This document shows, piece by piece, positions 4,932-7,900 of a stretch of 64,000 nucleotides of DNA. This DNA is from Asterias rubens. Lineage: Eukaryota. How positions within the stretch are numbered: position 1 is the stretch's first letter; the number at the start of each line of letters is the position of its first letter. A program made the translations under genes and the position numbers. Under the pieces are notes generated by a model. That model saw nothing but the letters and a program-made list of their open reading frames with translations. It was not told the origin of the DNA and searched no databases. The stretch lies in the NCBI RefSeq assembly GCF_902459465.1, contig NC_047062.1:15190001-15254000 (forward strand), written 5' to 3'.

Positions 4932-7900
4932 TCATTCGTTATTTTCAAAAGTAATAGAGATGTTTGTATATAGCGTAAGAAACTCTAAGTGTGTAATGTT
5001 GTATTTGACACTGTTAACACCGTCTTGTAGCATACGCGCCTTACTTCTCTTCCGAAGGTACGCACGACTGTAACAAGAAAAGGAAACAGAAAAAGAAATA
5101 GCATTAACGACGGACGTCTTCTTCATTTTCAGTTTTGTGATTCACTATAAATTTCTTGATTTTATAGAGTCTAATGTTAATCGTGGGAGGGGATTATAAT
5201 TCCATTATAGTACGATTTTTTTCAAGATCCAAAAGCAATAAAAATGGAATTGGATTTGACCTACTGAGCAAATCCACAAACTACGACTGTAGCCTGCGAG
5301 GGGTATAGTGTTAGATGGTATAAAAGGGGCTTTAGAAGTGACATGTGCCTACCTCTCGGGCAGATAACAAAATAGCCCTTTTCACACTATCTATCCCGGT
5401 GAATGCAGCCCAGGGGAGGCCTGGGAGTTTTGTTTTCACCGCCTGGTTTTAATCTGGTGCACTCACACTGTCCCCGCCTATGTCCCTATACAATTCAACG
5501 GGGTTTCAGCTGCATTCTTCCACGGGGACAAAGAACCTCAGGGAAAAGAGCAGGGTGAAAATGGCTTTACTCATGATTCGAAAACTTACTTTTCTGCTTC
5601 ATGTTTGTGCGAGCCCCGGGTGTGTTTTTCGCTGATAACTTTATAGAAAGCAATGTCGCTTTTGTATCGCGTCCTCTTGAGACCACTAACTGCCACTCTC
5701 CACCCCATGTCATCATCCTCGCAGCACCAACCCCAGTACTTGTTGCTAAATCCATTCACTTTTTTGAATTGGTTTCTATTAAAGGCTGTCACTCCACCAA
5801 AGATTGATCCGTACGGCGGTCTAAGTATGACAAGAATCACAAAACGATATCACGATGTTGCATTTTGTTTAAAGTTCTTCTTTTGTGTCTCTTTTGTATT
5901 TACTATAATTTTGACCATATTTAACACTCTGTATTTACACACTATTTACAACATTGAATAAACGTATCTATCTATGAATGTTAAAGGTTATTGGTAATTG
6001 TTAGCATACAAACTTACTTGGTAACAAACAATGGAGAGCTGTTGACATAATACAACACTGTGAGGAAATGTCTCCCTCTGAAACTTGCTTGGTTTTTGAA
6101 AAAGAGGTAATTTTTCACTCAAATAATAATATATTGTTGAAGACTTCGCCTGAAGCATTTTCTGAAAGCACACACAGCTGTGCAACAATTGTGTTTCTTC
6201 TTTCGTGATACACCATGGTGTGAATACTGATCTTTGACAAATACCAAAGGTGTCCAGTGCCTCTGAACAATAGTCTTAACTTGACCCCTTGTAGCTGACC
6301 CGCTTAGGATACCTCATGAGCGCGTCATCCAGCCAGGGGTAACATTGCCAACCTGTTGCCGACTAACACATCCTGACCCGGAAAACTTTAATCGCCGCCA
6401 CTGGCTAAACGAAAGACTGTCCTCTGAAAACAAAAACCTCTCTTGCCTGTAATTTCTGTTGTCTGCCCCTCCCATCAGGTGTCTAGGTAAATCCACGCAA
6501 TGATACGGATTGCCCTCATGCTGTGGAATGTGGTCGATATCATGGAATATGATGCAGTCCCACTCCGAAAACTTGGGAGACTCCAAAAAACCAGCGTTCA
6601 TCAGAATTCCTTTATTGAACAGAAAATCGTTCTCCTGTTGAAGAACAAATTGATAACAATTATTATTGTAAGATTTTGTTTTCAAAAGGCAGACAGTGAA
6701 AAGGTTCTGCCAGAGAGTTGCACAATTAAGGCTGATTTTGTCCACTTCCTTGCTAGAAAACTGTCAGTTAAATCTTCCAAGGCAAAACCCTTTGTTTTGG
6801 CGTGCATCCTCTACGATTTGCAATAAAATCACCACACAACACTGGTGAAAATGACAACTTTGCTGTGTCCATTATTTCATTGAGTGAGAGACCCCACAAG
6901 GGCACGTGATAAGAACGCCCTAGCGCGTACCCCCTAAGTTGTTCCTCTGTTGTTTGTTGACTATTAAACCCTTTTGGCGGAATCAATGGCGGTTACATTC
7001 CTAAAACTCGTCAAATTTGAGACGATAATAATTACCAATGTTATCACTTCAATTGTCACTCCGTATTGTATACAGCTGCTGAACACAATACAAAACAAAA
7101 ACATTATGCAAGAACAATGCACAAACTAGTAGACTAAATGGCATTGTGTGATAATAAGTATTGCATTTTTGTTCAAATTACACTGGAAAAAGTTCAGTGC
7201 CGTCTTGTTACATAGGAATGTTTAGCTGCACGTTATGCGAGAAAAGACGTGAGCGTGAACGTCAGAAACTTTGGTTGCAAAAAATCTCACGTTTTAAGCA
7301 TATACGTGAAGTTACCACTTTTCACGTCAGGTATGTATACGTGCAGACGTCATACGTGTACATGAAATAAGCCCAAAGTGGTGACGTCACAACACAATTT
7401 GTTGACGTTCACGTGTTTGCACGCGTAACATACGTGCAGACACATCCGTATTATTTCTCGTTTACCTGGTTAACGACGTAAATAGCGAACTCCAGGCGCT
7501 GTTTTTGTAGAAATGGTATCATGTACCGTAAAAATATCATCAGCTGATAATGCCGGTTACGGAATGGAATTATAATTGCAATCTGCGAAATGTATAAACA
7601 GACAAAATAAAGGCATTTTAAAAGTCCTGCATTTGGAATTATTATATTCAACAATGGTTTAAGTTTTCATATCCTTCCAAAACACGGACTCCCTTTATCC
7701 ATTTATCGTCTGTGCTCAAGCAGCAAGGGCAAAACAGCAGAAAACAAAACCTTGGACAGGTATCTGTTACAAAGGGAGTATTATATTCATGTGACCCCGT
7801 ACCCCACACAATGTAAAGAAGATGGCAGTTGAGTTTCATTTGTGTTTAAAAGGCACTGGGGTGGATTAAGACAAGTCTTATCTCGAGTTAGATATCTTAC

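What the first reader, a model, noticed from the sequence alone, without database searches (positions are those of the whole stretch)
5590..6634. GT7 glycosyltransferase with a rewired active site: WGWCCEDDD plus K at bovine R228 and I at Y289
Seen: the model aligns to bovine B4GalT1 with a constant +28 offset (D224/D226 = D252/D254, W286 = W314, D290 = D318). The normally invariant GWGG loop is GWCC (TGC TGC at 5726-5721). The R228 position is Lys (6613-6611), Y289 is Ile (5804-5802), and the Mn2+ ligands M344/H347 align to Val316/Glu319, with a His two residues later. Established (B4GalT1 mutagenesis, recalled): Y289L/I opens the site to N-acetyl donors, as in invertebrate bre-4-type beta4GalNAcT, and R228K shifts preference toward gluco-configured donors. 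Inference: this may be a natural beta1,4-GlcNAc/Glc-transferase or other neofunctionalised paralogue, and the vicinal Cys pair could form a redox-sensitive switch on the small flexible loop. A catalytically impaired paralogue is also possible.
Basis: partly seen in the sequence, partly recalled or inferred. Interest (0 to 1): 0.72.

Follow-up and report, generated by a model that had tools for sequence, protein, structure and literature searches.

The report
Sea-star galactosyltransferase with Cys-Cys catalytic loop
This is a real, expressed starfish (Asterias rubens) Golgi sugar-transferase gene from a starfish-only branch of the B4GalT5/6 family, in which two glycines of a catalytic loop described as strictly conserved have been cysteines since before the sampled starfish orders split, so the enzyme probably has an altered, still untested, specificity.

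Summary
On the minus strand lies an 8-exon GT7 gene whose spliced product is 100% identical over the 312 residues compared to Asterias rubens XP_033638535.1 (432 aa). TGC TGC at 5726-5721 gives WGWCCEDDD, AAA at 6613-6611 gives Lys at bovine R228, and ATC at 5804-5802 gives Ile at Y289.

Contigs from four public runs show no variant in that exon, and three of them carry every splice junction laid (exons 2-8). It is therefore not an assembly error, and the gene is transcribed.

New here:
- Cys-Cys is the hallmark of a monophyletic, starfish-only clade (Asterias x3 paralogues, Patiria x2, Acanthaster, two unnamed). The clade sits inside an echinoderm expansion that is sister to vertebrate B4GalT5/6.
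- The Cys codons differ synonymously between members (TGC/TGT in all four combinations).
- Catalytic-domain dN/dS against A. amurensis is 0.12-0.20.
- Among 318 motif instances, Gly315 is replaced only in this clade.
- The clade also changes acceptor loop 1 (K279N, F280R).

Lys228 and Ile289 are specific to this Asterias lineage, not to the clade. His347 is retained once a two-residue insertion shared with B4GalT5/6-type sequences is allowed.

Most likely this is an active beta-1,4-transferase with a reshaped Trp loop, possibly carrying a vicinal disulfide. Its substrates are unknown, and the proposed redox switch is untested.

The parts
12459..12648 (-). Coding exon 1: start codon, short cytoplasmic tail and the membrane helix of a type II Golgi protein
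   Evidence: Splice-exact reconstruction reproduces P0268. AF2 gives a helix at residues 7-46. Hydrophobic stretch seen.
9773..9835 (-). Coding exon 2 (stem region)
   Evidence: Junction 9206|9773 is present in contigs of X3, X13 and X16.
9102..9206 (-). Coding exon 3 (stem; holds Cys110, the equivalent of bovine C134)
   Evidence: Junction 8567|9102 in three runs. Cys columns.
8299..8567 (-). Coding exon 4 (stem helix and start of the catalytic domain: GGHWRPADC)
   Evidence: Junction 7582|8299 in three runs.
7466..7582 (-). Coding exon 5: Glyco_transf_7N core (IAIIIPFRNR ... VVNQ)
   Evidence: Pfam PF13733, E 1.2e-13..
6447..6634 (-). Coding exon 6: FNKG (Lys256 = bovine R228, codon 6613-6611), metal motif D-I-D, loop 1 'DNRNY' (N = K279, R = F280). 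Followed by a GC-AG intron.
   Evidence: Pfam PF13733, E 4.9e-14. PDB alignment with best hit 1YRO. Junction 5820|6447 with ends CT..GC in three runs. Clade-specific residues.
5590..5820 (-). Coding exon 7: Glyco_transf_7C with Ile317 (= Y289, 5804-5802), Trp loop WGWCCEDDD (Cys343/Cys344 = G315/G316, 5726-5721), and His377 (= H347)
   Evidence: Pfam PF02709, E 2.5e-21. PDB alignment. Zero other letters in four runs. Codons checked.
4932..5067 (-). Coding exon 8: C-terminal strands (...DGVNSVKY...LYTNISI...) and stop codon TGA at 4934-4932. The 3' UTR runs on at least to 4700.
   Evidence: Junction 5067|5590 in three runs and contigs reaching 4700.

Best explanation
The locus is an intact, spliced and transcribed Asterias rubens gene for a type II Golgi membrane glycosyltransferase of CAZy family GT7. 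It belongs to a starfish-only clade that arose by duplication inside the echinoderm expansion of B4GalT5/6-like enzymes; in vertebrates B4GalT5/6 are the lactosylceramide synthases. In the ancestor of this clade the Trp loop changed from GWGG to GWCC and acceptor loop 1 changed as well (K279N, F280R). Both states have since been kept by purifying selection. All residues needed for an inverting, metal-dependent beta-1,4 transfer are retained: DxD, W314, E317, D318 and H347. I therefore expect an active transferase whose donor and/or acceptor pocket differs from that of GWGG enzymes. The clade has no conserved partner cysteine, and the domain folds in the oxidising secretory pathway. The two cysteines therefore most likely form a vicinal disulfide that stiffens and reshapes the loop next to Trp314; the alternative is two free thiols. 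In the Asterias lineage of this window, Lys at R228 and Ile at Y289 were added later. By analogy with B4GalT1 mutants and invertebrate beta4GalNAcTs, these may relax donor choice towards N-acetylated and/or 4-equatorial sugars. Shown: gene structure, expression, conservation, phylogeny and fold. Inferred: enzymatic activity, disulfide state and substrates.
For: Gene model and identity: the eight exons reproduce P0268, and 312 of the 312 residues compared are identical. Expression: spliced contigs in X3, X13 and X16 carry the six junctions of exons 2-8, and no variant appears in the CC exon. Family and fold: Pfam 7N and 7C; AF2 mean pLDDT 81 with the catalytic core above 90; Foldseek TM-score by target 0.89-0.91 to B4GalT1 structures. 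Clade: all 10 clade proteins placed in the tree have CC, while the other echinoderm and vertebrate B4GalT5/6-like proteins in the alignment have Gly at 315 and mostly GG. The clade is monophyletic, with SH-aLRT 98, and 95 when the two columns are masked. Selection: the Cys codons are TGC TGC, TGT TGC, TGC TGT and TGT TGT in different members; dN/dS is 0.12-0.20 in the catalytic domain against about 0.7 in the stem. Rarity: position 315 is Gly in 304 of 318 motif instances and Cys only in this clade, while position 316 varies. The literature gives the motif as GWGxED (PMC4202792) and calls the Trp loop strictly conserved in B4GalT1-7 (PMC6198961). No clade-wide extra Cys exists. A vicinal disulfide has been seen in the crystal structure of a Golgi transferase, human B3GalT6 (PMC12811666). 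Loop 1 residues F276/Y282 (human numbering) bind the acceptor (PMC6198961), and the clade has Arg at the Phe position. R228K raises Glc transfer (PMC4202792). Ile/Leu at 289 determines GalNAc versus Gal transfer (PMC7943597).
Against: No enzymatic or structural data exist for any clade member. Replacing Gly315 in a loop that must flip could reduce or abolish activity. The AF2 confidence dips to 77 around the loop, and I could not read model coordinates, so neither the disulfide nor any contact was checked. The lineage of this window sits on a long stem branch of 1.1 changes per site, which fits either adaptation or a past period of relaxed constraint. Lys228 and Ile289 are not clade-wide, so donor inferences from B4GalT1 mutants may not transfer to a B4GalT5/6-type background, where position 289 is normally Phe. 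The trees were 'quick' searches with SH-aLRT support only.
Confidence: 0.6

Rival explanations
1. It is an ordinary B4GalT5/6-like galactosyltransferase (for example a lactosylceramide synthase). The Cys-Cys is a tolerated, functionally neutral replacement that was fixed once and inherited.
For: All catalytic residues are present. Position 316 tolerates many residues, including Cys in Mytilus enzymes. Starfish glycolipids do contain the Gal-(1->4)-Glc-Cer core that such an enzyme makes (PMC8228791).
Against: Gly315 is otherwise invariant in 304 non-clade motif instances. Both Cys are kept in every clade member despite synonymous turnover of their codons, with no reversion seen in four subclades. 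The change coincides with loss of the aromatic acceptor-stacking residue in loop 1. Starfish also keep several GWGG paralogues that could supply the ancestral function.
Confidence: 0.2
2. It is a catalytically dead or impaired paralogue, such as a pseudo-glycosyltransferase acting as a lectin, chaperone or partner subunit.
For: The Trp loop must move during catalysis and is called strictly conserved (PMC6198961). The branch leading to this lineage is long. The acceptor-binding Phe is lost.
Against: DxD, W314, E317, D318, H347 and G292 are all retained, which would not be expected in a non-catalytic protein over this time span. Catalytic-domain dN/dS is 0.12-0.20.
Confidence: 0.12
3. One reading: the vicinal Cys pair is a reversible redox switch that turns the enzyme on and off.
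For: Adjacent cysteines without a conserved partner lie in a mobile catalytic loop. Vicinal disulfides do occur in Golgi transferases (PMC12811666).
Against: Nothing in the data speaks to reversibility. The Golgi lumen is oxidising, so a permanent structural disulfide is simpler. This window's protein has a further unpaired Cys188 that most clade members lack, so redox chemistry is not uniform across the clade.
Confidence: 0.07
4. It is an assembly or sequencing error, or a pseudogene.
For: None was found.
Against: Four runs agree with the window at every base of the exon, and spliced transcripts exist. The reading frame is intact. The orthologue has identical codons.
Confidence: 0.01

Closest known systems
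Vertebrate B4GalT5 / B4GalT6 (UDP-Gal:glucosylceramide beta-1,4-galactosyltransferases, GT7)
   Same: They are the nearest non-echinoderm relatives in the tree. They share the domain order (7N + 7C), the HDVDH-type DxD motif, the two-residue insertion before the metal-binding His, the C-terminal 'DGLN..Y...LYTNISV' region and the type II topology.
   Different: This protein has GWCC instead of GWGG, Arg instead of Tyr at the loop 1 acceptor-stacking position, Asn instead of Lys at 279, 'EKH' instead of 'HHH', Lys instead of Arg228, and Ile instead of Phe289. It is not a 1:1 orthologue: it is one of many echinoderm paralogues.
Bovine/human B4GalT1 and its engineered mutants R228K (PDB 1YRO) and Y289L/I
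   Same: Same fold, with TM-score by target about 0.9. The catalytic residues align with a constant offset up to residue 343. The window's exon 6 matches the R228K mutant best. Ile sits at the donor-specificity position 289.
   Different: Only about 30% identical. It comes from a different subfamily. B4GalT1 has GWGG and F280. The mutant phenotypes were measured in a B4GalT1 background and may not carry over.
Invertebrate beta4GalNAcT (C. elegans bre-4, Drosophila beta4GalNAcTA/B, Bombyx GalNAcT)
   Same: Ile/Leu at the position of Tyr289, which the literature treats as the hallmark of GalNAc rather than Gal transfer (PMC7943597).
   Different: The bre-4-like sequences fall in the outgroup with B4GalT1-4, not with this gene, and they have GWGG.
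Human B3GalT6 (GT31), a Golgi transferase with a crystallographically observed vicinal disulfide Cys321-Cys322
   Same: Adjacent cysteines in the lumenal catalytic domain of a Golgi glycosyltransferase (PMC12811666).
   Different: It is an unrelated family. The position of its Cys pair relative to the active site was not compared. No bond has been observed for the starfish protein.

Membership tests
CAZy GT7 / Pfam Glyco_transf_7N + Glyco_transf_7C | Both Pfam domains above their gathering scores | tested here: met
   PF13733 scores 52.5 and 51.3 bits (cutoff 27). PF02709 scores 75.5 bits (cutoff 23)..
CAZy GT7 / Pfam Glyco_transf_7N + Glyco_transf_7C | GT-A fold superposable on B4GalT1 | tested here: met
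   AF2 model with mean pLDDT 81. Foldseek E 1e-28, TM-score by target 0.89-0.91 to 1NF5, 1O0R and 4L41.
CAZy GT7 / Pfam Glyco_transf_7N + Glyco_transf_7C | DxD metal-binding motif (bovine D252-V-D254) | tested here: met
   H-D-I-D-H aligned to S-D-V-D-L. The Asp columns are invariant in the alignment.
CAZy GT7 / Pfam Glyco_transf_7N + Glyco_transf_7C | Trp-loop motif GWGxED (PMC4202792) | tested here: not met
   The sequence is GWCCED. The Gly after Trp is Cys. Elsewhere it is Gly in 304 of 304 non-clade motif instances. W, E and D of the motif are present.
CAZy GT7 / Pfam Glyco_transf_7N + Glyco_transf_7C | Catalytic base Asp318 and Glu317 in EDDD; metal-binding His347 | tested here: met
   EDDD aligns. 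His377 aligns to H347 once the subfamily's two-residue insertion is allowed.
CAZy GT7 / Pfam Glyco_transf_7N + Glyco_transf_7C | Four conserved cysteines of the two B4GalT1 disulfides | tested here: met
   Cys110, 204, 275 and 294 lie in columns that are Cys in 83-100% of homologues. The assignment to the bovine pairs C134-C176 and C247-C266 is from memory.
CAZy GT7 / Pfam Glyco_transf_7N + Glyco_transf_7C | Beta-1,4 glycosyl transfer from a UDP-sugar | not testable with these tools
   Needs an enzyme assay.
B4GalT5/6 subfamily (lactosylceramide synthase) | Phylogenetic placement with B4GalT5/6 rather than B4GalT1-4, B4GalT7 or bre-4 | tested here: met
   The echinoderm expansion holding this gene is sister to vertebrate B4GalT5/6 (SH-aLRT 97-98). 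B4GalT1-4 and bre-4-like rows form the outgroup. The relationship is co-orthology, not 1:1 orthology.
B4GalT5/6 subfamily (lactosylceramide synthase) | Aromatic acceptor-stacking residue in loop 1 (Tyr in B4GalT5/6, Phe280 in B4GalT1) | tested here: not met
   It is Arg308 here and in 8 of 10 clade members. It is Trp or Tyr in 84 of 86 other B4GalT5/6-like sequences.
B4GalT5/6 subfamily (lactosylceramide synthase) | Galactose transfer to glucosylceramide | not testable with these tools
   Needs an enzyme assay.
Invertebrate beta4GalNAcT (bre-4 type) | Ile or Leu at the Tyr289 position | tested here: met
   Ile317, codon ATC at 5804-5802. The rule is taken from PMC7943597.
Invertebrate beta4GalNAcT (bre-4 type) | Groups with bre-4 / beta4GalNAcTA in a tree | tested here: not met
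   The bre-4-like rows lie in the outgroup.
Proteins with a vicinal (Cys-Cys) disulfide | Adjacent cysteines in an oxidising compartment without other partners | tested here: met
   The domain is lumenal. There is no clade-wide additional Cys.
Proteins with a vicinal (Cys-Cys) disulfide | An S-S bond between residues i and i+1 | not testable with these tools
It needs mass spectrometry or a structure.

The most novel reading that the evidence does not exclude
The GWCC clade supplies the beta-1,4-glycosyltransferases of a glycoconjugate pathway found only in starfish. One candidate step is the 1,4 bond that joins the third sugar to the quinovose/xylose branch point of asterosaponins, whose biosynthetic enzymes are unknown (PMC7760246). 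Another is an unusual ganglioside linkage. In this reading the Cys-Cys forms a vicinal disulfide that, together with Arg in loop 1, makes a new acceptor or donor subsite next to Trp314. The only supports are the matching taxonomic distribution (starfish only) and the beta-1,4 chemistry of the family. No data here link the gene to saponins or gangliosides.
Probability: 0.08. Interest if true: 0.8.

Novelty: new variant of a known kind. Interest (0 to 1): 0.55.

Why it matters
The Trp loop of beta-1,4-galactosyltransferases is described as strictly conserved and is central to donor binding, acceptor anchoring and the open-to-closed switch. A natural clade that has kept Cys-Cys there across two starfish orders, alongside a changed acceptor loop, shows how far this well-studied active site can be rebuilt. 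It offers a possible case of a vicinal disulfide inside a glycosyltransferase catalytic loop. It gives protein engineers, who already use B4GalT1 Y289L and R228K mutants as labelling tools, a set of new natural templates. It also gives concrete candidate enzymes for the unusual glycolipids and steroid glycosides of starfish, for which no glycosyltransferase is known.

Tried and rejected
1. My first exon references were out of frame and were corrected.

2. I first took the protein to end at '...EAEK' followed by a stop at 5588-5586, as the truncated database entries P0006 and P0007 do. The stop belongs to the intron: the donor is AA|GTAAGT. The true last exon is 5067-4932, and RNA junction 5067|5590 confirms it.

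3. I tested whether a clade-specific partner cysteine explains the pair. None exists; Cys188 is present in only about 45% of clade members.

4. I tested the loss of the metal ligands M344/H347. It is an alignment artefact for His. Met344 is Val here and varies in the subfamily.

5. A search with the full-length protein found no further GWCC members.

6. Literature searches for Gly315/Gly316 mutants and for vicinal disulfides in glycosyltransferases found no description of a GWCC loop. Only the B3GalT6 precedent turned up.

7. Three Qasba-group papers could not be read because they are not held. PMC3436570 held none of the residue terms searched.

8. The AF2 model could not be inspected atom by atom, so no S-S distance or contact of Ala229Gly with the loop was measured.

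9. The look-up of encoding contigs had no record for the Acanthaster protein.

10. Earlier scan notes held nothing on this gene family.
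Full report
**What is in the window.** The finding lies on the minus strand of a 38% GC animal sequence. ORF listing and reading of the strand showed short coding blocks bounded by splice signals. Pfam recognises Glyco_transf_7N in the blocks 7582-7466 and 6634-6449, and Glyco_transf_7C in 5819-5589. 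E-values run from 1e-13 to 2.5e-21, all well above the curated cut-offs. Only one GT7 gene is present in the 64 kb window.

- All codons are exactly where stated:
  - TGC TGC at 5726-5721, within WGWCCEDDD.
  - AAA at 6613-6611, within FNKG.
  - ATC at 5804-5802, within SIFGGV.
- HMMER alignments against solved B4GalT1 chains give the bovine equivalents, because chain index + 116 is the bovine number:
  - Lys = R228.
  - D-I-D = D252/D254.
  - Ile = Y289.
  - Trp = W314.
  - Cys-Cys = G315/G316.
  - EDDD = E317-D320.
- The best structural-database match of exon 6 is 1YRO, the engineered bovine R228K mutant.
- One correction is needed. HMMER inserts two residues and aligns the His of '..EKH' with H347. 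The family alignment shows that B4GalT5/6-type sequences share this insertion. The metal-binding His is therefore retained.

**Gene model, species and expression.**
- An exhaustive profile search with exon 7 led to full-length relatives, and a word-indexed search then gave names.
- The spliced product is 100% identical over the 312 residues compared to P0268, Asterias rubens XP_033638535.1 ('beta-1,4-galactosyltransferase 4-like', 432 aa). It is 96.5% identical to the A. amurensis orthologue P0154.
- A splice-exact reconstruction gives eight coding exons: 12648-12459, 9835-9773, 9206-9102, 8567-8299, 7582-7466, 6634-6447, 5820-5590 and 5067-4932. The intron after exon 6 is of the GC-AG type.
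- I first thought the protein stopped at 5588-5586. That stop lies in the intron, and the real last exon was found by comparison with the Patiria protein.
- Laying contigs of four public runs on 4700-9900 settled the artefact question:
  - Three runs (X3, X13, X16) contain spliced contigs with the six junctions of exons 2-8, including the CT..GC ends of the GC-AG intron.
  - None of the four runs shows any other letter in exon 5590-5820.
  - The gene is therefore real, transcribed and correctly spliced, and TGC TGC is not an assembly error.
- The protein has a short N-terminal tail, a long predicted helix (residues 7-46) over a hydrophobic segment, a low-confidence stem, and a confidently modelled catalytic domain.
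- The catalytic domain superposes on B4GalT1 structures with a TM-score by target of 0.89-0.91.

**Cys-Cys is a clade trait, not a quirk of one gene.**
- In an alignment of about 110 homologues, WGWCC (QGWCC in Acanthaster) occurs in the following proteins:
  - three Asterias paralogue groups;
  - two Patiria miniata genes;
  - one Acanthaster planci gene;
  - two unnamed sequences, P0006 and P0007.
- P0006 comes from an assembly whose species I could not identify. P0007 comes from a coastal metagenome scaffold.
- Every other echinoderm paralogue (sea urchins, brittle star, sea cucumbers, crinoids, and other starfish genes) and all vertebrate B4GalT5/6 have Gly at position 315, nearly all with GWGG.
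- A maximum-likelihood tree puts the ten GWCC proteins included in one clade, with SH-aLRT 98 and a single change of state. The clade lies inside an echinoderm expansion that is sister to vertebrate B4GalT5/6. B4GalT1-4 and bre-4-like proteins form the outgroup.
- Masking the two columns leaves the clade intact, with SH-aLRT 95.
- Asterias is a forcipulatid, and Patiria and Acanthaster are valvatids. The change therefore predates the split of these orders. From general knowledge that split is early Mesozoic; I did not date it here.

**Selection.**
- The Cys codons differ synonymously between members:

| Member | Cys codons |
|---|---|
| This gene and its A. amurensis orthologue | TGC TGC |
| Patiria P0013 | TGT TGC |
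| A. rubens paralogue C | TGC TGT |
| Paralogue B lineage | TGT TGT |

- The amino acids, not the bases, are therefore being conserved.
- Between A. rubens and A. amurensis, dN/dS is 0.12-0.20 in the catalytic domain and about 0.7 in the stem. This is the usual pattern for a working Golgi transferase.

**How unusual the change is.**
- In 318 motif instances from the 328 GT7 proteins retrieved, the residue after Trp314 is Gly in 304 and Cys in 14. All 14 are in this clade.
- The next position is variable: G 265, C 21, A 13, F 7, S 4, V 3 and others. It includes GWGC in Mytilus enzymes.
- This matches the published motif GWGxED (PMC4202792).
- It also makes the G315C change the real departure from a loop that PMC6198961 calls strictly conserved in B4GalT1-7.

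**Other clade-wide changes.**
- The clade also differs from its relatives at bovine positions 229 (Ala to Gly, next to R228), 279 (Lys/Arg to Asn) and 280 (Trp/Tyr to Arg), and at a few more sites.
- Position 280 is the Phe that, with Tyr286, holds the acceptor sugar by hydrophobic contact in B4GalT1 (PMC6198961, human Phe276/Tyr282).
- Two of the three mobile active-site elements, the Trp loop and loop 1, are thus remodelled together. The catalytic residues are untouched.

**What is specific to this gene.**
- Within the clade, Lys at 228 occurs only in the Asterias orthologue pair. It also occurs in several unrelated GWGG echinoderm paralogues.
- Position 289 is Phe in B4GalT5/6-type enzymes and is I, S, Y or M within the clade.
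Both rules were established in other backgrounds.
- This lineage also sits on a long stem branch of 1.1 changes per site.

**The cysteines.**
- The lumenal part has Cys110, 204, 275 and 294, which match the four conserved GT7 cysteines.
- It also has Cys188, which only about 45% of clade members share, and Cys343/344.
- No clade-wide partner exists. The pair is therefore either a vicinal disulfide or two free thiols.
- A vicinal disulfide has been seen in the crystal structure of another Golgi transferase, human B3GalT6 (PMC12811666).
- I could not test the bond, because model coordinates are not exposed. Confidence in the model dips to 77 around the loop.
- Nothing here bears on reversibility, so the redox-switch idea remains a guess.

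**Verdict.** It is an ancient, starfish-only subfamily derived from B4GalT5/6, with a Cys-Cys Trp loop and an altered acceptor loop. This Asterias lineage later added Lys228 and Ile289 on top. The substrates are unknown. Starfish-specific glycolipids (PMC8228791) and asterosaponins, which contain a beta-1,4 bond and whose enzymes are unknown (PMC7760246), are possible products, but nothing here links them to this gene. The public annotation already names the protein as a B4GalT-like enzyme. The papers I searched do not describe the GWCC clade. I class it as a new variant of a known kind.

**Limits.**
- The trees are short-search trees with SH-aLRT support only.
- Only the best 150 of 2563 exhaustive hits were visible.
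- Brittle-star and other starfish orders are thinly sampled.
- The runs' species and tissues are coded.

Noticed in passing
window 5821-6446 (intron 6): This is a GC-AG intron with donor CAG|GCAAGA. Spliced contigs in three runs confirm it, showing junction ends CT..GC on the plus strand.
   Followed up: yes
window 11376-12110 (-), inside intron 1: A 244-aa ORF resembles the C-terminal part of a retroelement reverse transcriptase (it begins MVKYADDTTVCG...). It is probably a retrotransposon fragment sitting in the first intron.
   Followed up: no
window 5918-6265 and 8006-8179 (introns 6 and 4): Summed contig word depth is 1e5 to 5e6 in all four runs, with many short joints and loose ends. These are very high-copy interspersed repeats.
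   Followed up: no
window 4925 and 4833 (3' UTR): All four runs read C where the window has G at 4925, seven bases past the stop codon. At 4833, contigs of three runs lack 5 or 7 bases. The reference allele at 4925 is absent from every run laid.
   Followed up: partly
window 15849-17363 (-): A 504-aa uninterrupted ORF made of tandem C2H2 zinc fingers lies upstream of the transferase gene.
   Followed up: no
L002:336-917 (assembly GCA_014845345.1): A B-type GWCC paralogue from an unidentified species encodes residues 153-346 in one uninterrupted exon. The A. rubens copy (L006) and this window's gene split that stretch across several exons, which suggests intron loss or a retrocopy origin. The database protein P0006 is truncated because the gene caller read into the last intron.
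   Followed up: partly
L003 (ENA metagenome scaffold, SOLA coastal station): A seawater metagenome scaffold carries the GWCC exon and is 99% identical at protein level to A. rubens paralogue B. This is probably starfish environmental DNA.
   Followed up: no
Proteins P0001, P0002, P0004, P0005: Several database GT7 proteins contain two complete catalytic domains in tandem. They may be fused gene models of tandem duplicates or real two-domain enzymes. This was not examined.
   Followed up: no
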